From: Pecten maximus
Taxonomy: Eukaryota
DNA: 64,000 nucleotides
Assembly (NCBI RefSeq): GCF_902652985.1
Contig: NC_047027.1
Coordinates: 13,826,001-13,890,000 of the forward strand
Direction of reading: 5' to 3'
Made by a program: the position numbers and the translations under genes. Shown here in pieces: positions 23,101 to 42,824 of this stretch (within the stretch, counting starts at the first letter, position 1; every line of letters starts with the position of its first letter). The notes under the pieces were generated by a model. That model was given only the letters and a program-made list of their open reading frames with translations, had not been told where the DNA came from and did not search any database.

Positions 23101-25126
23101 CAATTTCCTCAAGGGCCGGCATCGTGATCAAACATGGGCGTTGATTATCATTTGCTACGATTATATTTACGAGTATTGGTTTGTTTGAAATCAGGAAACA
23201 GGTTGAATTGCCAAATGTCAATGTTTTGAAAGAGCCAGCCTCTGGTAAATCAACATGTTCCGTTACGTTAGTTGAACACGTGTAATTCACAAAAGTATTT
23301 GGAAAACCCGACATAATTTTACATTCATATGTAAAACCTTGTGGAGCTGCAGTAACGTAGACGTTACCCCAGTTATCAATTGGAGGTAACTGTTCGGCCG
23401 CGTGGTTTCTTTTATATGCCTGACCAATGCGTTTGTTCCCATTAAATACACTCACAGTTCTAGAAGACCGTATCTCTGTTCCAGTAAAATCACTCTCCGT
23501 GTATACTTGCATTGTACTGTATTCATTTAAAACCTCTGTTATAGTACTTCCATTTGCATATGTGATACCGTTGTACTTAATTTCTGTATTGTTTGACCTT
23601 AGAATAACATGCACACATGTATTTTGATATATACCGACAACAAGGAATTCAGAATAATATTTCCCAGTGATGACAAAGTAGTGGTTGCCTTGGTAATGGG
23701 TTGGAAGAGAAAGAAAGCCTTCTATACCATTCACATGCTGACTAATTCCAAACACCAACAACTGTTGATCACAGGTAAGTTTGATCCCCTTTCGGCTTAG
23801 ATTAGAACCAACGACTTCGACATCACTTGTGAAAGTCTCAGTATGGACACCTCCACTTTGAACTGAAAAGTTTCTTGATTGTCCATCGTGGGATGAAATA
23901 GAGGCATGAACACTATCACTGTTCGAATTAAGAATAACAACATCAAATGTAACTTCATTTGTGGTATGTCGATTTTTCAAACACCCCAGCATATAGACTG
24001 TCATTTGGTTGGTGTCTCCTTTACTGCCATGTTCTACAATTACAGAGTAAACCTTTTCAATACAACAGTGTCGATTGTAAAAGAATGAAGCATTTGGTAC
24101 ATGATAATATGCAATGCTTGATTGTTTTTGTACCTTTTTAACGGTCCAGCTACAATTTTCATATATTTGATTTAGGTCAATTTTGGCTTTAGTTTATTTG
24201 ATTTAAACTTATTTGAAATACATTGTATATTGATCTTATACAAAAAGTTGCGGCGGTTGACAAAAAAACATTTAAAGATTTCAACTCCTTTAAACAATTA
24301 ATCATAAGGATAGAATGCTTGTGTTGTACATCGACTATCAGCATGACAGGCAAGGTCATACTAAAACTACGGTAAAGGGTGTGAGAACCACTTGATCAAC
24401 GAATTCATGTTATTTAAGAAATAATTAACGATGGTTCGTGTATTATTGCAGGATATGCAACGAGGACGAGGATATTTTGCAAATAAATTAATAACGAAAG
24501 CTGCAGGCCTGAGTTGTTAATTAAAATTGCAAAATATCCGAGTCCGAGTTGTATATCCTGCAACAATACACGAGTCAAAGTTGATTATTTCTATTCTACC
24601 ATGTACTGTTTAGTTCTGAGATCGACCTCTTTCTAATAGAAAAACAGCAAAGAAACCCCGAGAAAACCTTGTAATTTATTCCTTGAGAATTGCATTATTT
24701 GTTGATGAAATATACAGGCAATACAGTACTACGATCAAGAGCATCTTTCATATGGCATTGATTTTGAAAATTTAAAAAAAAAAGATAAAAAAAGGGGAAA
24801 AAAGGGGTGGCCTCCGAAGGATTCGAACTAGCGTCGTGATAAAAAATATATTGAAAGACTAACCCATTAACCCACTCGGCTATAGTAACATTTGATGAAA
24901 CGGGTGAATATTAGATATTTAAAATTGTAACAGCCGTGACTCACGACCGTGTATTATGGGCACGAGCGTGGGCTATTGGAAAATAATACATGGTTTTAAA
25001 CCAATCAAAACTGGCGTTACATAGCAAACATGGTAGAATATTGAACAAATCATTTCACGTCTTACCTGTTAAGACACTCAAGAGGAACAGTATCTTCTTT
25101 ACGTACAGAAACGCTGCAAAACTCAT
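20120..25126 (-). CDS. Single-pass membrane protein with IgGFc-binding domain, paralog B, ~550 aa
   Basis: Exons 25126-25066 (MSFAAFLYVKKILFLLSVLT), 24033-22817 (domain exon), 21342-21267 (KQQTTTENADVKCGESTVLPGSSTE) and 20418-20120 (CQCC, SAPDHRVA, TM). Same exon number and phases as paralog A. Confidence 0.88.
24414..25040. mobile_element. Hairpin-headed non-autonomous element (Crypton-like architecture) in intron 1 of paralog B
   Basis: Imperfect palindrome of ~175 bp at 24417-24591, then TATTCTACCATGT whose reverse complement ACATGGTAGAATA ends the element near 25040. The family name is inferred from architecture only. Confidence 0.65.
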
Positions 25127-25809: not shown

Positions 25810-28040
25810 AACTCCATAACAAGTATAAGCGTGTCTGTTTTGTATCCTCGTAACCAGTATCATCGTGTCTGTTTTGTACCCCCATAACTAGTATCATCGT
25901 GTCTGTTTTGAACCCCCGTAACTAGTATTTTCGTGTCTGTTTTGTACCCCCGTAACTAGTATCTTCGTGTCTGTTTTGTACCCCCGTAACTAGTATAAGC
26001 GTATCTGTTTGTACCCTCGTAACCAGTATCATCCTGTCTTATTGGTACCCCCGTAACTAGTATAAGCGTGTCTGTTTTGTACCCTCGTAACTAGTATAAG
26101 CGTGTCTGTTTTGTACCCCCGTAACTAGTATCATCGTGTCTGTTTTGTACCCCTATAACTAGTATCATCGTGTCTGTTTTGTATCCTCGTAACTAGTATC
26201 ATCCTGTCTTATTGGTACCCCCGTAACTAGTATAAGCGTGTCTGTTTTGTACCCCCGTAACTAGTATAAGCGTGTCTGTTTTGCACCCTCGTAACTAGTA
26301 TATTCGTGTCTGTGTTGTTCCCCCGTAACTAGTATAAGCGTGTCTGTTTTGTACCCTCCTAGCTAGTATAAGCGTGTCTGTTTTGTACCCTCCTAACTAG
26401 TATAAGCGTGTCTGTTTTGTACCCTCGTAACTAGTATAAGCGTATCTGTTTTGTACCCTCGTAACCAGTATCATCCTGTCTGTTTTGTACCCCCGTAACT
26501 AGTATAAGCGTGTCTGTTTTGTAGCCTCCTAACTAGTATAAGCGTGTCTGTTTTGTACCCTCCTAACTAGTATAAGCGTGTCTGTTTTGTACCCTCCTAA
26601 CTAGTATAAGCGTGTCTGTTTTGTACCCTCGTAACTAGTATAAGCGTGTCTGTTTTGTACCCTCGTAACTAGTATAAGCGTGTCTGTTTTGTACCCCCGT
26701 AAGTAGTATAAGCGTGTCTGTTTTGTACCCCCGTAACTAGTATTATCCTGTCTGTTTTGTACCCCCGTAACTAGTATTATCGTGTCTGTTTTGTACCTCC
26801 GTAACAAGTATAAGCGTGTCTGTTTTGTACCCCCATAACTAGTATTTTCGTGTCTGTTTTGTACCCTCGTAACTAGTATAAGCGTTTCTGTTTGGTTCCT
26901 TCGTAACAAGTATAGGTGTATCTGATTTGTACCCTCGTAACTAGTATCATCGTGTCAGTTTTGTACCCCCGTAGCTAGTATTATCGTGTCTGTTTTGTAC
27001 CCCCGTAACCAGCATCACGTGTCTGTTTTGTACCCCCATAACTAGTATCATCGTGTCTGTATTGTACCCCCGTAACTAGTATCTTCGTGTCTGTTTTGTA
27101 CCCCCGTAACCAGCATCACGTGTCTGTTTTGTACCCCCGTAACAAGTATCATCGTGTCTGTATTGTGCCCCCGTAACTAGTATCTTCGTGTCTGTTTTGA
27201 ACCCCCGTAACTAGTATCTTCGTGTCTGTTTTGTACCCCCGTAACTAGCATCTTCGTGTCTACTTTGAACCCCCGTAACAAGTATAAGCGTGTCTGTTTT
27301 GTATCCCCGTAACTAGTATCATCGTGTCTGTTTTGTACCCCCGTAACTAGTATTATCCTGTCTGTTTTGTACCTCCGTAACAAGTATAAGCGTGTCAGTT
27401 TTGTACCCCCATAACTAGTATTTTCGTGTCTGTTTTATACCCTCGTAACTAGTATAAGCGTTTCTGTTTGGTTCCTTCGTAACAAGTATAGGTGTATCTG
27501 ATTTGTACCCTCGTAACTAGTATCATCGTGTCAGTTTTGTACCCCCGTAGCTAGTTTTATCGTGTCTGTTTTGTACCCCCGTAACCAGCATCACGTGTCT
27601 GTTTTGTACCCCCATAACTAGTATCATCGTGTCTGTATTGTACCCCCGTAACTAGTATCTTCGTGTCTGTGTTGTACCCCCGTAACCAGCATCACGTGTC
27701 TGTTTTGTACCCCCGTAACAAGTATCATCGTGTCTGTATTGTGCCCCCGTAACTAGTATCTTCGTGTCTGTTTTGAACCCCCGTAACTAGTATCTTCGTG
27801 TCTGTTTTGTACCCCCGTAACTAGCATCTTCGTGTCTACTTTGAACCCCCGTAACAAGTATAAGCGTGTCTGTTTTGTATCCCCGTAACTAGTATCATCG
27901 TGTCTGTTTTGAACCCCCGTAACTAGTATTTTCGTGTCTGTTTTGAACCCCCGTAACTAGTATCATCGTGTCTGTTTTGTACCCCCGTAACTAGTATCTT
28001 CGTGTCTGTTTTGTACCCCCGTAACTAGTATCATCGTGAT
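25810..28040. repeat. 34-bp tandem satellite (CCCCCGTAACTAGTATAAGCGTGTCTGTTTTGTA) with a 576-bp higher-order duplication
   Basis: Unit is directly visible. The variant block AGCGTTTCTGTTTGGTTCCTTCGTAACAAGTATAGG occurs at 26881 and 27457. Confidence 0.97.
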
Positions 28041-32842: not shown

Positions 32843-35800
32843 ATGAAGACATCTGGCCTCGCGAAGTTTCTTGTTACAGGTAATCAACAATATTGGTTTG
32901 TTTTCAGCTGATGCCAGCTAAGGAAGTTCTGATAATGCTAATTCGCTATTCTGTTGTTTTTGATGTTTTAATATATATGTATTTTTCAATGCATGCATCA
33001 ATTTACATTTAGCTTACCTCTGTGTTACAAATTTATCACGAAACTTGTATTCAATGTCATGTTTCTTTTTTTAACCAGTTTTAGGGGGGAAATGTATACG
33101 TTATTCTTCCAATGAGTGAATATCAGATCATTTAATGCTTTACTTAATTTTATTTAGAGCAGTGCCTGTCACACTTCGCAATGTTGCCGTTTTAACGAAA
33201 ACACCTTTTACGATACCACTTGTGGCGGAGATCAGGTGTTTATCTATGTTCAATTCTTGTTTATTTTAGTTTAGGTTCAAATCACTGAGTTTTTTAAACA
33301 ATTTTCCATTCTGGAATTAAACATATCATTTTATAATTTCAAACAGTGCTGTTGCAGTCGTTTTGCAATGGTCAGTCCGATTTGACCATACAGGAGCGAA
33401 CCTTTGGGTCAGCTGTTGTTCAGGCAGTAACTGATCGTATACGGAGTAGTTGCATATACTCAGATGACCGACTGTTTATCAGACGCTTAGCCATTGTTCA
33501 GTCAGATGACGGAGGCGTCAACACTACCTACCGAAACGGATACTATGGCGGAATATGGCAGGTAAGGTTTCCTTTTATCTTAATCCCTCGCTGTTATAGA
33601 CTAGACAGAAAAATACATCACATTAAACCTGAATGAAGCAAAAAGCATTCTACGAACCTCGGTTTAAACATTGAGTCATGAACAGTATAATTGTCAATAA
33701 TTTTTAAATGATTTATCTTGAACTTCCCCTAATCAAGAAAACAATCATATAATAATTTCTAAAAAAAACTGTTCACTATCAGATAAAACTAAATCATTTT
33801 AACGATTCAGTCAATTTACTTTATAATCTTGCTGGGTTCCTAGGCTTACTGAAGTACTAGGTTAAAAAAAAACAAAGCGGCTTACACCGCGAAAACGGCA
33901 TTATAAATTCCACCAACTGATTTTAAACTTTATTTTGCTAATTTAAATCATTTGTTACTAAATATCTTATATCACTGTTTCATAATTGGCCAAGCATTTA
34001 AAACACATTTCTAGCTATTTAAGCATTAGGATCAGTCTCAATTCATCGAATCAACCAGTAACTGTTAGATACATCTGAATTGCATTGACTACACTTTTCA
34101 ACGGTTTGTTTCTATAACACAGCATATATTGTCTTAAAACATTTTGAAATTATGTACCATTAAATTTGTTTTATAGATTTCGTATTGGTTTAATATTTTT
34201 AGTCCTAATAACCTTAACCGTGTTGTTGTGTCGATAAGAATAAAATAACTGACTGGAGATATCTTATCAAACTTACTTTCTGCTAGGAAAAATATGTATT
34301 AAAATTTTAAAAAAAGCACATTTCATCATTGGCTGAAGATATTGAACCTTCTGGTTTATACTTCCTTTCATTTCTGTCAAATCTGCTCACTTACGTCAAA
34401 ATTCATAGTAAAAAGTTATTAAAAATCTAAAACTAGAACGTGAACCGACACTTTTTTTTTATTCAATTTTTTTCCACATAATCACATACATCTATACATC
34501 GCATATGTAATTGGATACATTATTATTCACATTACAACTTAATATTCAATGACAATTTCTAAGAAGATTATTTAAATTTTCATTATATTCCTAATATGGA
34601 TGTACATTACATTACACATGTAAAAAAGAAAAGACATGTAGCTGTTGTTACCTCACGAAACATGGTAAATCTTTAAACAGAAACTGTGTACATTTTGTAG
34701 TTTACAAAACCATTGGTTTAGCAATAGATAAAAATTGTGTAATTTACCAACCAGCTAATTAGTTAACTTTATATTTTACCCTTTCCCTTTTACTGACCTT
34801 ATCTTTATATTCATAATATGCATGTACAAGTACAACATATGTAAAATATGGACATGCATCTGTTAATTGTTACCTAACGAAACATGCTAAAACTATAAAC
34901 AGAAACTTTTATAGTTTACTAATTGGTTTAACAATAGACAAAAATTGTGTAATTTACCAACCAGTTAACTTGTTAACTTAAATGTTGATTAATAAATATC
35001 CATTTATAGTTTACCTTTTCTGGTTTTTTATGATGATATGTATATATCTTCTATTTTGTTGTAATGGTTGATGTATTGTTTGCTTTCTGAAAATATTGGA
35101 GTTGTGTTTTTCAGTTTACACAAATATATATAGTATCTCATAAGCAGCAATACAAAGTTTATCTAATAATTATGTTCTATGTCTGTTACACCAAGACGAA
35201 AGGTCATTGGATGTCTAGGTAAAGTTATTTGGCATTTGTTTTCCAAAATTTCCATAAACAAAAGTTTTGACAACACTACATTCCCAAAATAATAGAAGAA
35301 TAGTTTCTCTTCCAATTGTGCAGAAGGTACATCTTTCAGTTTCTGAAAGTTTACATTTCATCAACTTAGTATTGGTATACAATATCCTGTGTTCTAGTTT
35401 ATAATGAAAGTTAATAAGTTTAGTATCATCAGTTACCTCCCTTGTTAGAAGATAAAGTAATTCCCAAGTTTCATCACTGATGTCAGTATTTAATATTTCT
35501 TGCCACTCTCTTTGGCTATTAATTGATTTTTCAGAAAGAGGTCTGATCATAATATGATAAAATATTTAGTGACTATATCGTGTGTATTCAAATAATTAAT
35601 CAACATATATGGAATTATAGGTATATCTACAATACAATTACTATTCCGTAGAATGTCCGTCCAGTTTCTTGGTATGGCATTCATAACACCAAAGTACTCT
35701 ATAAAGTTTACATTTATACTGTATTTATGAGAAAAAGTTTCATAGGACATAAATATATTGTTTTCTAATAAATCAGAGACAAAAAATATATCTTTTTTAC

Positions 35801-38800
35801 ACCAGTGTTCATAGAGAAAAAATATACTGCCTCTTTTAATATAGTTATTGAAAAAAATAGGTTGTGATATTATTTCTTCGGGGGTTGTGGGGAATACATG
35901 TTCTTGTATAGAGGCCCAAGATATGAAAACTTCCCTCCAAAAAGTATTGAATTTTTTTGATAATTCTGTTAAACCATCTTTAGTCATTTTAAAATTGTAT
36001 CCCCTCCAATACACTCTAATTTATCTAAAAGTATTTTTTTCCAAGCTGCATGATTTGAGGGATCCATAATCTTTTTTATCCACGACATCTTTAAAGCATG
36101 ACAAAAAGTTAAAACATGTGGTAGGCGTAATCCCCCATTTATATAATCACTATACACTATATTTCTCTTGATTTTGTCTGGCTTACCATCCCACAAGAAA
36201 CTAAAAAATGTTTTTTGTAATTCAATAGTAAACCGACACTTGGCGCGTTGAATTACATCGCCGGATTAGAAACAGCAAATCATTGGTTTGTTTATTATAT
36301 ACCGAGAAGTTCCACTGCCAATTTATGGTGGATTTTTACGTTTAACCTATCTTTTTAATTGTTGTTAGACTCGCAATCGCTCTGTAAGTTCTATATGATG
36401 TGATGTTTCCCAATCGTTTTCTTTGCCTTCACGGCACCAATCAGTACATCTGACCAACTTTGGACTGATGCAAGGCTTTGATCGCCAGTCCGCCATTCTT
36501 CAAAACAAATATTGTGATAATGTGTGAATGACATAATGTGTGAATGACATAGTTTGACGATAATGTGTAAGTTCATCTTGTTATCAAACAATAAGCCAAA
36601 AAATGTAAAGAAGGGGAAAGTAGAAATAACTTCCATTCAGTCGTGGACAACAAGATAATTCTAGATGTCTTGTTTATTTTAGATTGATGTGTATCTTTTT
36701 TTGATGTACCTAATACTTAACACCCATAACCTTATTGATTTGGAGACCCATTCACATATCTATTTTAGATTGATGAAGCGAAATTTAACATCACTAGAAA
36801 CTGTAGCTCTTCTGCAATAAGCCAGGAATGCAGCGCTATATTGTCTGAATTCAACATCAATTGGCGTACTGTTCAGTGGACAGACCTCTGGAAACCACTG
36901 TACTCCGGCCTAGCTGCGTCTCTATACCTTAAACTACAAGGTGTTGACCCTGCCCCCGCTGACCTTTCAAGTCAGGCATATCTTTGGACAAATCATTTCC
37001 AGCCGGCCCAAAGCGAGTTAACTTACACGACAAAGATTCAGCAAGCAGAGAGCACTGCCGATGGTAAGTGTTTTAATATGCGATTCTTTTTTTAGAATAA
37101 GTAAAATTATGATCCTTTTAAGATGATAACGAAACGATGTAGTTTCATGAATAATTTCATAATTTATTTTACTTTTTTATTTTAATTTTTTTAATTTTCA
37201 ATGTATGTCTTTTGTAGCATTGAAAATACAATAAGCCATCATCATCTACCAAAATCGGATTTCAGTCTTTTTTTTTTTTCTCGGAAGATCTTACTTTTTT
37301 TTGTTGTTTTTTTTTCAAAGTGGACGTATCCTACATTATTGCTTATTGTGATATATTTTCGTGGGACGCACCCTTCCATTAAACATTAATATCTTCTCTA
37401 ATAACGGTTGGTGTGGCGTACCCTACTCACATGCATTAAGATATATTCTAATACAAATTTATGAGACATACCCTACTCATATTTATTATTATATATTTTA
37501 ATACAGGTTCGTGTGACTACAAACCTATAGATGTTGTTTTCATCATTGACGAGTCCGGGAGTGTTGGGTCTACCAATTTCAACAAAACATTAAATTTCCT
37601 ATCGGAGGTCGTAGACAACCTAAATATCGGACCTAGTACTGTACATGTTGGTCTCGTCAAGTTCAGCTCTTTTGCTACTCTGGAATTCTATCTAGGAACA
37701 CATTCGACAAAAACATCCTTAAAGTCAGCTATTTTGAATACCGCATATAGAAGTGGAGGGACAAGCATCGGGGCGGGTATACAGCACGCAGACAAGTATG
37801 TCTTTCCAGAAATATATGGCGGAAGAAAAGATGCAACAAAAATTGCCATTTTGGTCACGGATGGTGTGTCATCGTCTGCTTCGTTTACTAAACAAGCAGC
37901 AGACGCTGCCAAGGACAACCACATTAGGATCTTTGCTGTGGGGATTGGACGTATCAATATCGTAGAACTCAACTATGCAGCCAGCGATCCCGCCTGTACA
38001 CACGTTTCAGTTCTGACAAATTTCAACCAAATCGATGATATCATTTATGAAATCAAGAAAAGCGCCTGTAGAGGTAAATGTATTTACATTTTACGTGAAC
38101 AACTCTCGTATCACGTTAACAACTTTCGTACCACGTGAACAACTCTCGTATCACGTGAACAACTCTCGTATTGAAGCATTTTCTCATCCATTGGCTGTTG
38201 CGAACACGTTTAAACCCTCTTAAGAAAAAACTGTAATTGTGGTTATTTACGCCGAGGTTAATTTCACGATTTCGATATGTAGACTATACGCGTGCGTGGA
38301 ATTTTCGCGATCAAAAGGCCTTTGCGTAATAAGTGAATGTTTTCCCTCACAAAAAATCGACGTTTACAGTATGTACCTTGCCATGGTTTAGAAATATTTT
38401 AATTAATTTAAAGATTCAGGAAAAAAGGGGAAAACGAATTCAATAAAGATGCAAACAAATGTTTTTAAATAAATCAGATTGATGCGAAACGGTGAAATTA
38501 TCATTACAGTGAAAATCTGAGACAGATAATTGTCAGCCTTAGCTGCAAATTCTTCCTATTTTTGGTTATTAACGGACTATTTTCTTTCAGCGTCAAACCA
38601 GGTAGGAGAGGAAGCCGAAGTGGACGGGGTTGTAACGGGAGAGGACGGATCTACCATTCAAATTGACACTGGCGACGGCAACAACAAGACCATCACTGTA
38701 TGTATATTAAAAAAGCAAAACAAAATTTCACGGTACTAAAAGTGAATGTTGATGTATATGATTTTAGAAAAAAGTAAATAACACTTTAGTTTTGATTTAA

Positions 38801-41800
38801 CATCTTCATTATTTGTTTTGCCTAATCATTATTGCGAGCCTCCTTACAAAAATCCCTTGAGCGATTTCCTACGTATTTGTGTCAATTGATACGAATTTAT
38901 AAATTGTTATCCACCACATTCTCCATTTTCTTAACTTTTGTCATTTGTTTTTTCTTAAGTGGAATGTTTATCTTGATTGCTGTATTATTTTATATCAAAC
39001 GTTACTGTCAAATCTGCTTTGTAAAATGCCTATATTAACTGCACAATTTAAGGCAAACATACATTTATATATCTCTTTGAACGCTACGTAATGCTTGCTT
39101 CAATTCACAGACAGAAGTAGATTGTGGTGAACTGAGCGTGTTCAGTTCATTCTATACGTCACATCCGGGTCCTGCGTTCTACGACCAAAAGGATACTGCA
39201 ATAGAAGGTTCCCCGTCGGTGTTCGTTGTCCACGTGACCGACAGCCGGCCTCTCTACATAACGTTTGTTAGACTTAACCCCGATCCTTCCTGTCCTAATG
39301 CATCGTACACTGTGAACGTTTCCAATGATCATCCAACAGACACGGGTAAGTACATACTGCGTGAAGCTACCAGAATCATTATTTAATATTTGAAGACGGT
39401 GGGGACAAGGTGGTATAGTGGCAGGACACAGGGTCACGTGCCCAAAGTGTCGATAGTTTAAGTCCAGTCACGGGGTTGTGTTGTACCAAGATAATTTACT
39501 CAGTTGTGTTCGAGTGGTGGTAGGGCAGTGCAGACAAATTTAGGGTGTACTCTGTAAAGTGCTAATATTGAAGCTCCTGATGTCAATAGTCCATGTCATG
39601 GACGCTGTGTTATGGAAGCTCCTGATCTTAATAGTTCAAGTCCAGTCATGAGCGTTGTGTTGTATCATTGAACAAGATACTTTATTCCGTTGTGTTGGAG
39701 TGGACTCAGCTGTAAATGACTAGGTAGTAGGGCAGTGCAGAAAAAACTAGTGTGTACTCTGTAAGCGCTGATATGGAACTCCAGATGTATGCTCCTTAGG
39801 GCATTGAGAAATGCATTGGATCTGAGATGGTTACGTTGCTTTGATATAGGGGTATATATATAGAATATTATAATATAATTATCAAAAATTAGTAAAATCA
39901 ACAGAGTGCAATTTAACCATATAAAGCATTGATGGACATAAAGAGATAAACAATATCCCGTTATATACCATAGGGACTTAGGGGTTGGTAGTTTCTTGGC
40001 TACATATATTTTTATAAATCGTTGAGATCCCCCATTGAGATATATAGCATTGCTAGGCATCAAGGGATGAAGTGAGTTAGTTTATTGGTTATATATTTGA
40101 AATATTTGAGATCCCTATCCTTTAACAATATCTTGTTCGATACCAACAATTAAAGCTATTAACATTTGATCCAATCCAACCATGTGGATTATACAGGCCT
40201 TCTGGGCATCTTATCGTTTTAAACTAAACGTTAGTGTTCCTATATATAACTTTATTATTTATCTTATTTTGTTATCAATAAAATGTACAAGTAATGATAC
40301 AACATTCACACACATATCAACACATACTAAGACCGTTACCTGTATATATGTCCACGTTCTCACCGAGTACACTTCATATACATTGTTTTCAGAATTCAAA
40401 ACATAATCTTTCTATACTACTTGTATATACAGAGCATACATTTCAGTCAATGCCACGATATACTTGTAAACAAAGTATCTTTCATTTTCATAAAATACAT
40501 CAATAATCATACATTCAAACCACATATATCATTATATATTTGAATAGTGTGTTAGCCACGTACACACCTCACTCCATAAACAATGTGCCTGATACATGTT
40601 TCAATCAGTCAATTTATTTTTTACGAGTGAAAATAAGGTCAATCAAAAATGCAATATCTTCACTTATTTAACCCACATACAGTATTACTCATATCCTTCG
40701 AGGTCGAGGTTATAAAAATAAAAATACGCTTTTTTATATTTCGCATTTTACTCAATGTTTGTGCTTGTTTCATTATCATTATTTTCCCCTACTGATCTTG
40801 ATCGTATTGATGAGTCGTTTAGAAATTATAAATATATACTACTTTGGTCAGAATTTTGAATATGAATTCAGCATTAAAATTCTATATAAAAATTGTGCTC
40901 TCTCCAGCAAGGAATAACGGCATAATAACAAAACCATAATTAGAACTCAAAACTCGTAAAAACAAAGCTAATATTTAAGCAAAAATATAGATTCCCAAAA
41001 AGGTACAAAGAAATTGAGACCAGATGTTTCGGATGAGAAATCGTCTTCTGGTTCATCGACGACCAACGCCATACAAATTTAGTTCAAATCCGCAAAGTCG
41101 CACTCTCAAAGGACTGTTAGGGTGGTGACAATGGAACCACTTGGCATATCGATAAGCATCAAACAAGTCAAACTCCATATTTCTTTGAGAATTCCAAATG
41201 AGGTTATGATCTCGACCTAGGAACATTCTCGTTGTCTGTAACCTTGCATCTGCCCAAACCTCATGTTCATTTCTCCGTCAGTAGTTGACATCGATCACTG
41301 TAATCGTGATAATGGGAACGAGGCCATTAAATGTCGAATTATCTAATTAAATCATGTTGTATAGCTTACAATTATTTATTTTCTACCAGGTACTGACATC
41401 ATATGCAAAGTGAACGGCAAGTGGCAGTTATGTGGTTCCGGTAATGTAGACGGGGATGACGATTTTAACGAAATATGCGGAGGTATGATCTTAGAATTAC
41501 TGATATATATTTGCTAATGAACACTGTAACAGAATTGTTTAAAGTGTTGATCACTGAGTTGACTACATATATATGTGTGTTTTATGTAAATAATCATTAA
41601 TTATAAAACATCAATCAATATATAGAAATCAATACTCACAGAAAACAATCGAAATGTAGAGTACGATGCTGATGCAAATCAAGGTATTAATAGAATATCA
41701 TATAATTTGTGTTGTAGTGTATGAAAATACCGACTGGAATACTATATCTAATCCCTGTAAGAAGGACGGCGATAAGTACCACTCTCACCCGACAGATCCG

Positions 41801-42824
41801 GCCAAGTTCATCACTTGTGGTGACACACAGAAGATGTACATCACCCAATGTCCTGTCGGTAAACTCTACACCAACGGAGGATGTGCATATGCACACAGGC
41901 TAAGCTTTGGAAACATTGACCATTCTGCAGGAAGTCCGGTCGATGCCCTCAGCTTTCATATAATTCTCTGCAGAGTCAGTGGTAGTCTTGGAGAATGTCT
42001 AAGTAAAGATCTCCCACAGGACTTCTATGAAAAACTATGTGAAGGTACTTTCCGAATTATTCTGATTCTACCTCTTTAATATATTCATTATCAAAAGATT
42101 TTACTTCAAAGCAATATTCTATCTCGTAAACTGAATGAAAACGATGATATTTAGGTACAATCAAATGGCGTTTTCATCGAATGTAGAAGTCCTTTTTGAG
42201 TGGTGATTTCTATCATCAAAATATTCATAAAATGGTCAATTGTCTTTTTCAGGAACAACACCATCGGTGCAAGATCCTTGTACTTCCTGTGCAATAAGTG
42301 ACGGCCATCTTGTACACCCTTTTCCACTGGACGACAACAAATACATCACATGTGAGGACGAGGACAATCACCTCATCACACAGTGTCCTGTCGGAGAGAG
42401 GTTTAGCGTTGCCAAACAGGGCTGTATCTCATCTACAGAGGACGGCGACGACGAAGATAGTGTAGAGGGTAATGGCAATGTTAATCCTTGTGCAGAAGCT
42501 GTCAAGCTACACAAATTTTACTTTCCGTACCCGAACGATAAAACGAAATTTATCCAGTGTGATGAATGGGGCCATTCCTTTATTATGTCTTGTCCATCCG
42601 GTCAAATTTGGTTCGATCAAATTTTGACATGCGCAGTTGATACACCTGGTACAAAAACAGATGGGGGCTATTCCGAAAACTCGTGTACCGGTAATGCAGG
42701 CAAGACTATAGCTCACTCAGACCCGACCAAATACATCAACTGTGATGTAAGCGGCATCGCTCACATCATGTCGTGTCCGAAAGGTCTCAGGTTTTATATG
42801 TCACTGTCTAGGTGTGACTGGTAA
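32843..42824 (+). CDS. Secreted modular protein, ~815 aa: lysozyme-like N-terminal domain + VWA + linker domain + four chitin-binding type-2 (CBM14)-like modules
   Basis: Exons 32843-32879, 33347-33561, 36769-37063, 37507-38073 (VWA: DVVFIIDESGSV, GGT, ILVTDG; MIDAS intact), 38591-38697, 39111-39345, 41390-41482, 41718-42044 and 42253-42824. All are GT-AG and phase-consistent, 2448 nt in total. Repeats of the form C..HP.D..K(F/Y)I.C....I..CP.G..(W/F/Y)....C. Confidence 0.9.
34452..36230 (-). mobile_element. 5'-truncated L1/Tx1-clade LINE, frameshifted ORF2 C-terminus, in intron 2 of the VWA gene
   Basis: Peptides FLWDGKPDKIKRNIVYSDYINGGLRLP and zf-RVT-like CTFC...ETILLLFWEC. Poly(T) at 34452-34460 is the poly(A) tail. 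Target-site duplication AACCGACACTT at 34443 and 36231. Confidence 0.9.
38092..38171. repeat. 20-bp tandem repeat (CACGTGAACAACTCTCGTAT), 4 copies, just after the VWA exon donor
   Basis: Directly visible. Confidence 0.85.
38230..38371. mobile_element. Short MITE-like element with ACTGTAA...TTACAGT ends
   Basis: Short inverted termini and a CG-richer interior than the flanks. Confidence 0.4.
39455..39800. repeat. Degenerate tandem duplication, period ~180 bp, intronic
   Basis: AGTCCAGTCA..GTTGTGTTGTA at ~39461 and ~39639. GTAGGGCAGTGCAGA is repeated. Confidence 0.7.

What the first reader, a model, noticed from the sequence alone, without database searches (positions are those of the whole stretch)
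33347..37063. Unnamed lysozyme/transglycosylase-like domain with Gln at the putative catalytic Glu, fused to VWA and chitin-binding modules
Seen: exons 2-3 splice to DLTIQERTFGSAVVQAVTDRIRSSCIYSDDRLFIRRLAIVQSDDGGVNTTYRNGYYGGIWQIDEAKF...INWRTVQWTDLWKPLYSGLAASLYL...PADLSSQAYLWTNHF. Established: lysozyme-like/SLT-fold enzymes carry a helix ending in catalytic E-S, followed by a G-x-x-Q motif and a later helix. Inference: the order of elements here (RLAIV-QS ... GGIWQI ... YSGLAA.LYL ... QA.LW) fits that fold. As I recall, related invertebrate and phage sequences have VES/xES at this spot. Here it is VQS, which suggests a catalytically dead glycan-binding pseudoenzyme, or an altered mechanism. It is joined to an intact MIDAS VWA and four chitin-binding modules, so it is a candidate chitin/peptidoglycan cross-linking matrix or pattern-recognition protein. 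It differs from the Pif/BMSP shell proteins, which are not described with this domain.
Basis: partly seen in the sequence, partly recalled or inferred. Interest (0 to 1): 0.78.

Follow-up and report, generated by a model that had tools for sequence, protein, structure and literature searches.

The report
Dead lysozyme-like domain, scallop matrix protein
A well-expressed scallop gene encodes a secreted protein whose first domain has the fold of bacterial cell-wall-cutting enzymes but carries glutamine where relatives carry a conserved glutamate at the presumed catalytic site, so it probably binds sugar chains rather than cutting them.

Summary
GT..AG joints appear in RNA contigs of three runs.

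Together the two exons encode a domain of about 160 aa with no Pfam, NCBIfam or PDB sequence match. It belongs to a large unnamed family of 747 clusters at 50% identity. Named members come from molluscs, an annelid, a brittle star and a whitefly, nearly always followed by a VWA domain. The family also has phage relatives (phrog_3108, unknown function).

An AlphaFold model of a family member (pLDDT 91.6) matches only lysozyme-like structures in the PDB. The best match is E. coli MltE (Z 9.1, 129 aa). The other top matches, all at Z about 8, are Slt, phiKZ gp144 and a GH23 chitinase.

The family's Glu-Ser/Thr sits at the end of helix 2. Aligned ranges of five enzymes place their catalytic Glu there, within about 2 residues. 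No residue-level superposition could be printed.

Glu is kept in 213 of 249 full domains. The window gene has Gln (CAG, 33499-33501), as do its orthologues in three other scallop genera. The rest of the motif set is conserved.

I read it as a non-catalytic glycan-binding module in a mantle-secreted VWA plus chitin-binding matrix protein. That function is inferred, not shown. This scan noted the same family before, on the two chromosome-2 paralogues (s1-784566).

The parts
32843..32879 (+). Exon 1 as supported by RNA. It encodes MKTSGLAKFLVT plus the first base of a Val codon, the start of a signal peptide.
   Evidence: Translation. The joint 32879|33347 (GT..AG) is seen in RNA contigs of X2 and X3. 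The RefSeq model P0151 instead uses an upstream first exon at 23696-23773.
33347..33561 (+). Exon 2: the end of the signal peptide, then helix 1, helix 2 and the loop of the lysozyme-like domain.
   Evidence: It is 55% and 52% identical (alignment; 56% by the genome search) to the two paralogues on contig C2.
33499..33501 (+). CAG codon for Gln (Q78 of P0151), at the family's conserved Glu and the presumed catalytic acid position. The next residue is Ser.
   Evidence: Read from the sequence. Family table: E 213, Q 11 and other residues 25 of 249 domains. RNA contigs of X1, X3 and X5 show no difference here.
33547..33561 (+). The G-G-I-W-Q motif, the counterpart by order and spacing of the G-L-M-Q motif of SLT/GEWL enzymes.
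   Evidence: W is present in 248 of 249 domains and G in 234 of 249. The correspondence to GLMQ is an inference from motif order and from one non-significant hhalign run.
33562..36768 (+). Intron 2 (3207 bases). It holds a fragment of a non-LTR retroelement on the minus strand at about 35215-36196.
   Evidence: Joint. ORFs. Weak zf-RVT match, E 6e-5.
36769..37063 (+). Exon 3: the second half of the lysozyme-like domain, with K-P-L-Y-S-G-L-A-A at 36892-36918 and Q-A-x-L-W further on.
   Evidence: P122, S125 and Q149 (P0042 numbering) are almost invariant in the family.
37507..38073 (+). Exon 4: VWA domain with a complete MIDAS motif (D-E-S-G-S at 37548-37562, then Thr and Asp).
   Evidence: Pfam PF00092, E 7.5e-45. 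RNA contigs. pLDDT above 90 in the model of P0151.
38590..41481 (+). Exons 5-7 (about 38590-38697, 39111-39359 and 41389-41481): a linker and a beta-sandwich domain with no Pfam match.
   Evidence: tblastn of P0151 on the window. The model gives strands over residues 388-492 at pLDDT 88-93. No Pfam match.
41717..42049 (+). Exon 8: the first chitin-binding (peritrophin-A-like) module, below the Pfam cut-off.
   Evidence: CBM_14 at E 0.0014, 19.1 bits against a cut-off of 22.1. Mapping.
42252..42824 (+). Last exon: three CBM_14 chitin-binding modules and the stop codon.
   Evidence: CBM_14 at E 6e-18 in 3 stretches. Mapping.

Best explanation
The gene (Pecten maximus LOC117340464) encodes a secreted mantle protein. 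Its domains, in order, are a signal peptide, a lysozyme-like domain, a VWA domain with a full MIDAS motif, a beta-sandwich domain and four chitin-binding modules.

The first domain belongs to an unnamed family within the lysozyme-like superfamily. In structure it is closest to the GH23 lytic transglycosylases and g-type lysozymes. Its nearest sequence relatives outside animals are phage proteins (phrog_3108).

In most family members a Glu-Ser/Thr pair ends helix 2, where GH23 enzymes place their single catalytic acid. In this gene, and in its orthologues in three other scallop genera, that Glu is Gln. The other conserved residues, which I take to line the sugar-binding groove, are kept.

The most likely working: the domain still binds a GlcNAc-type glycan chain (chitin, possibly peptidoglycan) but no longer cuts it. 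Together with the four chitin-binding modules it holds the protein on chitin. The VWA MIDAS site then links it, through a metal ion, to other matrix proteins during shell building or repair.

Shown here: the gene model, its expression, the family, the fold and the Glu/Gln pattern. Inferred: that the site is the catalytic one, that activity is lost, that the domain binds glycan, and the matrix role.
For: Gene model and expression. Spliced RNA contigs at high depth confirm the model.

Family. The profile search found 747 clusters. None of 81 members has a Pfam match that recurs or reaches Pfam's cut-offs; there are only scattered hits at E 0.018 or weaker. The PDB sequence search gave only two weak matches, E 0.1 and 0.95, to unrelated proteins.

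Fold. The AF2 model of P0042 has pLDDT 91.6. All 50 top rows of a search against 48,161 PDB chains are lysozyme-like: MltE Z 8.9, GH23 chitinase Z 8.6, phiKZ gp144 Z 8.5, Slt70 Z 8.2. In the second look, MltE reaches Z 9.1 over 129 aa. Of Foldseek's 248 candidates only 51 reached Z 2, and the unrelated helical proteins in that list (UreF, SMU1, P450 and others) are not among the rows shown. The BFVD search gave phage proteins at E 9e-6 and then LT_GEWL/SLT proteins.

Site. The Glu lies 31 residues after the aligned start of the model. The catalytic Glu lies 29 residues after the aligned start in MltE (E64) and Slt (E503), and also in MltF and g-type lysozyme. Glu35 of human lysozyme maps to about model residue 62. 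E61 is the only acid in that helix end.

Conservation. E in 213 of 249 domains; S or T next to it in all but one domain (one Asn). All four scallop orthologues have Q. Non-Glu forms keep S62, D64, Q81, Y124, S125 and Q149. Among scallops the N-domain is 66-78% identical, against 78-83% for the VWA domain.

Loss of activity. PDB titles name MltE E64Q and Slt E503Q as inactive mutants. MltE-E64Q was crystallised with bound chitopentaose.

Role. The Yesso scallop orthologue A0A210Q121 heads the paper's table of candidate mantle proteins raised after infestation by the shell-boring worm Polydora (3.56-fold; PMC9641012).
Against: No profile comparison by sequence links the family to SLT. The hhalign runs were non-significant and gave different alignments under different settings.

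The best Z of about 9 is moderate for a helical protein.

No residue-level superposition could be printed, so the Glu equivalence rests on aligned ranges and topology.

No member of the family, animal or phage, has a tested activity.

The window protein itself does not reach phrog_3108 at E 0.01.

The tissue of the RNA runs is unknown to me. The shell-matrix role rests on one proteomic study of an orthologue.
Confidence: 0.6

Rival explanations
1. The domain is still an enzyme with a shifted mechanism. A nearby acid does the work of the missing Glu: either the Asp-Asp that follows Gln-Ser in scallops (QSDDG), or the Asp-Glu after GGIWQ-I. Alternatively the Gln acts with substrate assistance from the N-acetyl group.
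For: All other conserved residues are intact in non-Glu forms. The scallop orthologues share an extra Asp right after Q-S. Gln has been kept over four scallop genera and has not drifted.
Against: In other clades the same site is A, V, M, I, L, K, S or N, with no recurrent compensating acid. E-to-Q mutants of the closest structural relatives are named inactive in PDB titles. Loss of Glu goes together with loss of the Y-N pair near the C-terminus: N158 is present in 111 of 205 Glu forms and 3 of 34 non-Glu forms.
Confidence: 0.12
2. The protein is chiefly an immune pattern-recognition or opsonin-type molecule. The dead lysozyme-like domain would recognise bacterial peptidoglycan, and the VWA and chitin-binding parts would tether captured microbes to chitinous surfaces. 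On this reading it is not a structural shell-matrix component.
For: The closest structural relatives act on peptidoglycan. The phage relatives also point to peptidoglycan. The orthologue rises on infestation of the shell.
Against: The Polydora paper lists the orthologue under melanisation in its table and, in the discussion, among proteins directly associated with biomineralisation, raised in mantle tissue. Four chitin-binding modules suggest a chitin scaffold. GH23 also includes a chitinase (3w6b, Z 8.6), and MltE-E64Q binds chitopentaose. The two roles do not exclude each other.
Confidence: 0.2
3. The family only shares the lysozyme-like arrangement of helices and was never a glycan-active enzyme. 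The conserved Glu would be structural or serve another ligand, so Gln here would say nothing about lost catalysis.
For: There is no significant sequence or profile link to any lysozyme family. Z of about 9 is within the range the tool warns about for helical proteins. phrog_3108 has no known function.
Against: All 50 top structural rows belong to one superfamily. Of Foldseek's 248 candidates only 51 reached Z 2, and the unrelated helical proteins in that list are not among the rows shown. The order and spacing of four conserved motifs parallel SLT (E-S, then G-x-x-Q, then P..x..AA.L.L, then Y-N). Phages commonly carry this kind of enzyme. In an IMG/VR contig the domain is the C-terminal part of a 462-aa protein.
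Confidence: 0.08

Closest known systems
GH23 family-1 lytic transglycosylases (E. coli MltE/EmtA, Slt70, MltC, MltF; phage phiKZ gp144)
   Same: They are the best structural matches (Z 8.2-9.1 over 119-129 aligned residues). The layout is the same: two helices, an acid followed by Ser at the end of the second helix, a loop, then a G-x-x-Q motif. There is a single acid catalyst position.
   Different: There is no detectable sequence or profile similarity; Pfam SLT does not hit. Identity in the structural alignments is 9-16%. The window protein has Gln for the acid. It is eukaryotic, secreted and fused to VWA and CBM_14 domains.
Goose-type (g-type) lysozymes and the GH23 chitinase of Ralstonia sp. 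A-471
   Same: Same superfamily and catalytic layout. The chitinase (3w6b, Z 8.6) shows that this fold can act on chitin. G-type lysozyme occurs in animals (4g9s, Z 5.8).
   Different: The structural score to g-type lysozyme is lower than to the bacterial transglycosylases. There is no sequence match. No activity is known for the present family.
Phage family phrog_3108 (for example Klebsiella phage phiKO2 Gp54), function unknown
   Same: These are true homologues by sequence. The family member P0042 hits the profile at E 3.7e-13. phiKO2 Gp54 hits at E 3.7e-53 and an IMG/VR phage protein at E 1e-6. They carry the same motifs (E-S/T, G-x-W/F-Q, KPLYSALAARL).
   Different: The phage proteins stand alone at about 160 aa or sit at the C-terminus of a larger protein. 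They keep Glu. The window protein itself does not reach the profile at E 0.01.
Pif, BMSP and other VWA plus chitin-binding shell-matrix proteins of molluscs
   Same: They combine a signal peptide, one or more VWA domains and peritrophin-A chitin-binding modules, and are expressed in the mantle. An orthologue is discussed among biomineralisation proteins.
   Different: As far as I know (from memory, not tested here) Pif and BMSP have no lysozyme-like N-terminal domain. Whether this protein is in the shell has not been shown.
Glycosidase-derived lectins: chitinase-like lectins (YKL-40 type, GH18) and alpha-lactalbumin (from c-type lysozyme)
   Same: They share the logic: a glycosidase fold kept under selection after loss of the catalytic acid, and reused for binding.
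   Different: They have different folds or families and arose independently. This is an analogy only (my own knowledge).

Membership tests
Lysozyme-like superfamily (GH23 / SLT / LT_GEWL type) | Lysozyme-like three-dimensional fold, mainly helical, with a substrate groove | tested here: met
   The model of the family member P0042 has pLDDT 91.6. All 50 top PDB rows are lysozyme-like, the best being MltE at Z 8.9-9.1 over 125-129 aa. In the model of the window protein P0151 the N-domain has pLDDT 92-98 with the same order of helices.
Lysozyme-like superfamily (GH23 / SLT / LT_GEWL type) | Sequence match to a curated family model (Pfam SLT PF01464 or another lysozyme-clan family) | tested here: not met
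   No Pfam hit for the exons, for 10 full proteins or for 81 members, even at E 10. PF01464 finds nothing in this genome. hhalign against MltE and Slt70 is not significant.
Lysozyme-like superfamily (GH23 / SLT / LT_GEWL type) | Catalytic Glu at the end of the helix before the loop, followed by Ser | tested here: not met
   The window protein has Gln-Ser (CAG at 33499-33501). The family at large has Glu-Ser/Thr in 213 of 249 domains. The equivalence to the catalytic Glu is inferred from aligned ranges.
Lysozyme-like superfamily (GH23 / SLT / LT_GEWL type) | Cleavage of beta-1,4 bonds in peptidoglycan or chitin | not testable with these tools
   This needs enzyme assays. No member of the family has been assayed, as far as my paper searches show.
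phrog_3108-like family (phage and animal homologues) | Significant profile match and shared motifs | tested here: met
   The window's exon 2 is one of the three rows of the query profile, which found 747 clusters. By blastp its best match is 72% identical (P0009). The member P0042 hits phrog_3108 at E 3.7e-13, whereas P0151 itself gives no hit at E 0.01. tblastn of P0042 against phages gives E 2e-10 and E 3e-3.
Pif/BMSP-type shell-matrix proteins | Secreted protein with VWA and peritrophin-A chitin-binding domains | tested here: met
   VWA at E 1.8e-43 and CBM_14 at E 3.7e-18 in P0151. Signal-peptide-like exon 1.
Pif/BMSP-type shell-matrix proteins | Presence in the shell matrix, or orthology to Pif or BMSP | not tested
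   The only evidence is a mantle proteome of an orthologue. No comparison with Pif or BMSP sequences was made.

The most novel reading that the evidence does not exclude
An old, unnamed animal protein family joins a phage-related lysozyme-like enzyme domain to a VWA domain. Named members occur in molluscs, an annelid, a brittle star and a whitefly. Within molluscs the catalytic Glu has changed at least 11 times on the family tree (direction not inferred), while the groove has stayed under selection. On this reading a cell-wall or chitin-cutting enzyme was turned repeatedly into a chitin-holding matrix organiser used in shell building and repair. The Glu-bearing and Gln-bearing paralogues in one scallop genome would be a natural enzyme and pseudoenzyme pair.
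Probability: 0.35. Interest if true: 0.72.

Novelty: new variant of a known kind. Interest (0 to 1): 0.6.

Why it matters
The fold and the idea of a dead glycosidase reused as a lectin are both known. Three things appear to be undescribed:

- The domain family itself has no Pfam model, and its PHROG has unknown function. My paper searches found nothing on it.
- Its regular fusion to a VWA domain across several animal phyla is not described.
- Neither is the repeated loss of its conserved Glu in molluscs.

The finding gives a concrete, testable hypothesis for a set of abundant 'uncharacterized', 'cartilage matrix protein' and 'matrilin-like' mantle proteins. One of them is the scallop protein that heads a published table of mantle proteins raised after a shell borer attacks.

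It also provides a natural Glu/Gln paralogue pair within one genome. That pair could be used to ask whether mollusc matrix assembly uses glycan cutting, glycan holding, or both.

Tried and rejected
**Sequence searches that found nothing**
- Pfam, NCBIfam and PHROGs on the single exons gave nothing useful.
- PDB sequence searches with exon 2's profile, with P0042 and with the 81-member profile found no lysozyme.

**Profile and structure searches that were weak**
- hhalign of the family against Slt70 or MltE gave E 0.1-0.2, and the alignments changed with the settings. Only one run paired the family Glu with E64. I do not count this as evidence.
- Foldseek against the PDB was not significant on its own. 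The best hit was phiKZ gp144 at E 0.52.
- The word search with MltE returned only close EmtA orthologues, which were useless for building a broad profile.

**Readings I rejected**
- 'Stand-alone' 180-230-aa family members are not stand-alone. P0042, the one whose contig was examined, is an exon-level gene call on a contig that looks eukaryotic, with a VWA exon next to it; I take the others to be the same kind of call.
- The only hit in the bacterial genome collection is a contig labelled as a Stappiaceae MAG. It carries two intron-containing copies of the N-domain plus VWA and EGF exons, so it looks eukaryotic. I therefore claim no bacterial member.
- A recent phage-to-scallop transfer is rejected, because the domain-plus-VWA architecture occurs in several animal phyla.
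- Decay of the N-domain is rejected, because it is about as conserved among scallops as the other domains.

No typed or joined exon sequence was sent to any tool. The exons were searched one by one by reference, and the public record P0151, which holds exons 2-4 verbatim, stood in for the spliced protein. A fold of the domain cut out of the window protein was therefore left out.

Full report
**What is in the sequence**

The window holds a multi-exon gene on the + strand.
- RNA contigs from three runs of one study carry the GT..AG joints 32879|33347, 33561|36769 and 37063|37507. A run from a second study carries the last joint. Contig depth is high, about 715-785 in two runs.
- RNA supports a short first exon at 32843-32879 that encodes MKTSGLAKFLVT. 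Together with the start of exon 2 this reads as a signal peptide.
- The Gln in question is CAG at 33499-33501. RNA contigs of X1, X3 and X5 cover it, and their differences lie elsewhere.
- Exon 4 (37507-38073) is a VWA domain (Pfam E 7.5e-45) with a full MIDAS motif.
- The last two coding exons carry one sub-threshold and three clear CBM_14 chitin-binding modules.

The public protein P0151 (XP_033758115.1, 'uncharacterized protein LOC117340464', Pecten maximus) contains exons 2-4 verbatim and maps wholly onto the window. It differs only in using an upstream first exon.

P0151 stood in for the spliced product.

**The domain is a family without a name**

The exons have no match in Pfam, NCBIfam or the PDB by sequence.

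The same genome has two tandem paralogues on contig C2, each also followed by a VWA exon. One reads ...AYVES..., the other ...AYVQS....

A profile of the three copies of exon 2 found 747 clusters at 50% identity with E <= 1e-3, and 403 with E <= 1e-10.

Full-length members are typically about 700 aa, with the N-domain followed by VWA and then CBM_14. The N-domain itself is never covered by Pfam.

Named members come from the following groups:
- scallops, oysters, mussels, a clam and a freshwater mussel;
- many gastropods;
- the annelid Owenia;
- the brittle star Amphiura, where the domain is fused to VWA, EGF, MAM and LDLa domains;
- the whitefly Bemisia.

The database also holds many 180-230-aa 'proteins'. 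P0042, the one whose contig I examined, is an exon-level gene call on a contig that looks eukaryotic, with a VWA exon next door. I take the others to be the same, so I do not treat them as stand-alone forms. The contig labelled as a bacterial MAG has the same look.

**Phage relatives**

- tblastn of a family member against phage genomes hits a 636-kb uncultured phage (E 2e-10) and Klebsiella phage phiKO2 Gp54 and its kin (E 3e-3).
- An IMG/VR contig encodes a 462-aa protein whose C-terminal 150 aa are 37% identical to the animal domain.
- The family member P0042 hits phrog_3108 (function unknown) at E 3.7e-13. phiKO2 Gp54 hits it at E 3.7e-53.
- The phage copies read KES, TET and the like, so they keep the Glu.
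- The ESM Atlas look-alikes of the window domain are also unnamed phage clusters (score 0.93-0.94). That result is a lead only.

**Fold**

An AlphaFold2 model of the member P0042, built with a 50-row alignment, is confident (mean pLDDT 91.6, pTM 0.85).

Foldseek against the PDB was not significant. Its weak list was led by phiKZ gp144, MltF, MltE and human lysozyme.

An exhaustive structural alignment against 48,161 PDB chains gave 50 top rows that all belong to the lysozyme-like superfamily:

| Match | Z | Aligned residues |
|---|---|---|
| MltE-E64Q | 8.9 | 125 |
| GH23 chitinase 3w6b | 8.6 | not noted |
| phiKZ gp144 | 8.5 | not noted |
| Slt70 | 8.2 | not noted |

Below these come GH73, GH19, destabilase, g-type and c-type lysozymes and alpha-lactalbumin.

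In the second look at Foldseek's 248 candidates, MltE reached Z 9.1 over 129 aa. Only 51 candidates reached Z 2, and the unrelated helical proteins seen in Foldseek's list are not among the rows shown. That serves as an internal control for a Z value that the tool itself calls middling.

Against predicted viral structures, the first hits are phage proteins at E 9e-6 to 3e-2 (TM up to 0.68). I take these to be the family's phage kin; their membership was not checked. They are followed by LT_GEWL and SLT proteins.

The model of the window protein itself (P0151) has pLDDT 92-98 over the N-domain and the same order of helices. Q78-S79 end helix 70-79.

**Is the Gln at the catalytic place?**

Within the family the alignment is unambiguous: Q78 of the window protein is E61 of P0042.

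E61 is the next-to-last residue of the second helix of the aligned core, 31 residues after the aligned start (model residue 30).
- In MltE the alignment starts at residue 35 and the catalytic Glu is E64, 29 residues later.
- In P. aeruginosa Slt the start is 474-476 and the Glu is E503.
- In human lysozyme the alignment starts at residue 1, and Glu35 maps to about model residue 62.

E64 and E503 are named in the PDB titles. Glu35, and the MltF and g-type lysozyme numbers, are from my memory.

The model's loop between helices 1 and 2 is a few residues longer, which accounts for the offset of 2. The helix end (LLRRIAYVET) holds no other acid.

The order of conserved motifs also parallels SLT enzymes: E-S/T, then G-I-W-Q after 17 residues (15 in MltE), then KPLYSxLAAxL, then Y-W-x-x-Y-N.

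I put the equivalence at about 85-90%. It is not measured, because the tools give aligned ranges and not residue pairs. hhalign was unstable and non-significant.

**Pattern of the site**

| Residue at the Glu site | Domains (of 249 full domains) |
|---|---|
| Glu | 213 |
| Gln | 11 |
| Ala | 8 |
| Val | 5 |
| Met | 4 |
| Ser | 3 |
| Asn | 2 |
| Lys, Ile, Leu | 1 each |

The next residue is Ser or Thr in all but one domain, which has Asn.

On a tree of 180 domains, built without that column, the Glu versus non-Glu state changes at least 11 times. Nearly all non-Glu rows lie in the clade of VWA-fused proteins whose named members are molluscs. Two exceptions (P0006 and P0287) lie among the unnamed rows.

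The window gene groups with its orthologues in Argopecten, Mizuhopecten and Ylistrum, and all four have Gln.

Non-Glu forms keep Ser/Thr62, Asp64, Gln81, Tyr124, Ser125 and Gln149. They tend to lose the C-terminal Tyr-Asn pair.

Among scallops the N-domain is 66-78% identical, against 78-83% for the VWA domain and 63-69% for the chitin-binding region. The domain is therefore maintained, not decaying.

**How it most likely works**

E-to-Q mutants of the closest structural relatives are described as inactive in PDB titles. MltE-E64Q was crystallised holding chitopentaose. A Gln form of this fold can therefore be expected to hold a GlcNAc chain without cutting it.

With four chitin-binding modules and a metal-dependent VWA adhesion site, the simplest reading is a secreted cross-linker of chitin and matrix proteins.

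The Yesso scallop orthologue (A0A210Q121, named 'Cartilage matrix protein') was found as protein in mantle. It heads the paper's table of candidate proteins raised after infestation by the shell-boring worm Polydora (3.56-fold). The authors list it under melanisation and discuss it with biomineralisation proteins (PMC9641012).

The rival readings are a peptidoglycan-recognition role, a shifted catalytic mechanism, and a family that was never an enzyme. None is excluded, and they are scored separately.

**Novelty**

My paper searches found nothing on this domain or on the accession numbers beyond that proteome table.

Another agent of this scan reached a similar reading for the two C2 paralogues (s1-784566). 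I had seen those genes independently.

I class the finding as a new variant of a known kind. The fold is known. What is new is a family whose sequence is not recognised by current models, an undescribed architecture, and repeated loss of the presumed catalytic residue.

Noticed in passing
window 35215-36196 (- strand), inside intron 2: A run of ORFs that looks like the C-terminal part of a non-LTR retrotransposon protein (weak zf-RVT match, E 6e-5). It accounts for much of the 3.2-kb intron.
   Followed up: partly
window 25817-28038: A satellite array of a 34-bp unit, 65.5 copies at 87% matches, about 5 kb upstream of the RNA-supported first exon.
   Followed up: no
window 23696-23773 versus 32843-32879: The RefSeq model starts with an exon 9 kb upstream (MGWKRKK...). 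RNA contigs of two runs join a different first exon (MKTSGLAKFLVT) to exon 2. These are either alternative first exons or a mis-predicted start. The RNA-supported start gives the cleaner signal peptide.
   Followed up: partly
window about 38590-39359 (P0151 residues 388-492): Between the VWA domain and the chitin-binding modules lies a confidently predicted beta-sandwich domain (pLDDT 88-93). It has no Pfam match and is conserved in mollusc homologues. Its fold was not searched.
   Followed up: no
L014 (OZ219963.1, labelled 'MAG: Stappiaceae bacterium ... chromosome: 12'): This contig carries two copies of the lysozyme-like exon, each with what look like introns, followed by VWA and EGF-like exons. 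It looks like animal DNA binned as a bacterial genome.
   Followed up: partly
G000 C2:28134642-28149199 (L002, L003, L005, L006): Two tandem paralogues with the same architecture, one with Glu-Ser and one with Gln-Ser at the site. On the tree the Gln paralogue sits next to a Glu-bearing clam protein, apart from the window gene's clade, so it appears to be a separate loss.
   Followed up: partly
window 33514 and 33405: RNA contigs show variants in exon 2. G>C at 33514 in run X2 would change Gly to Arg two residues after the Asp-Asp. T>C at 33405 appears in run X1. These are probably alleles.
   Followed up: no
P0092 / P0438 (Bemisia tabaci): The whitefly is the only arthropod among the named members (N-domain plus VWA, about 515 aa, on a 64-Mb scaffold). 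Whether this reflects sparse retention in arthropods or a separate acquisition was not examined.
   Followed up: no
P0002, P0003, P0004, P0006 (ENA contigs): Some unnamed members carry three tandem copies of the lysozyme-like domain and no VWA domain. In P0002 all three copies keep Glu-Thr but have Gly or Asp where the others have the Gln of GGIWQ.
   Followed up: no
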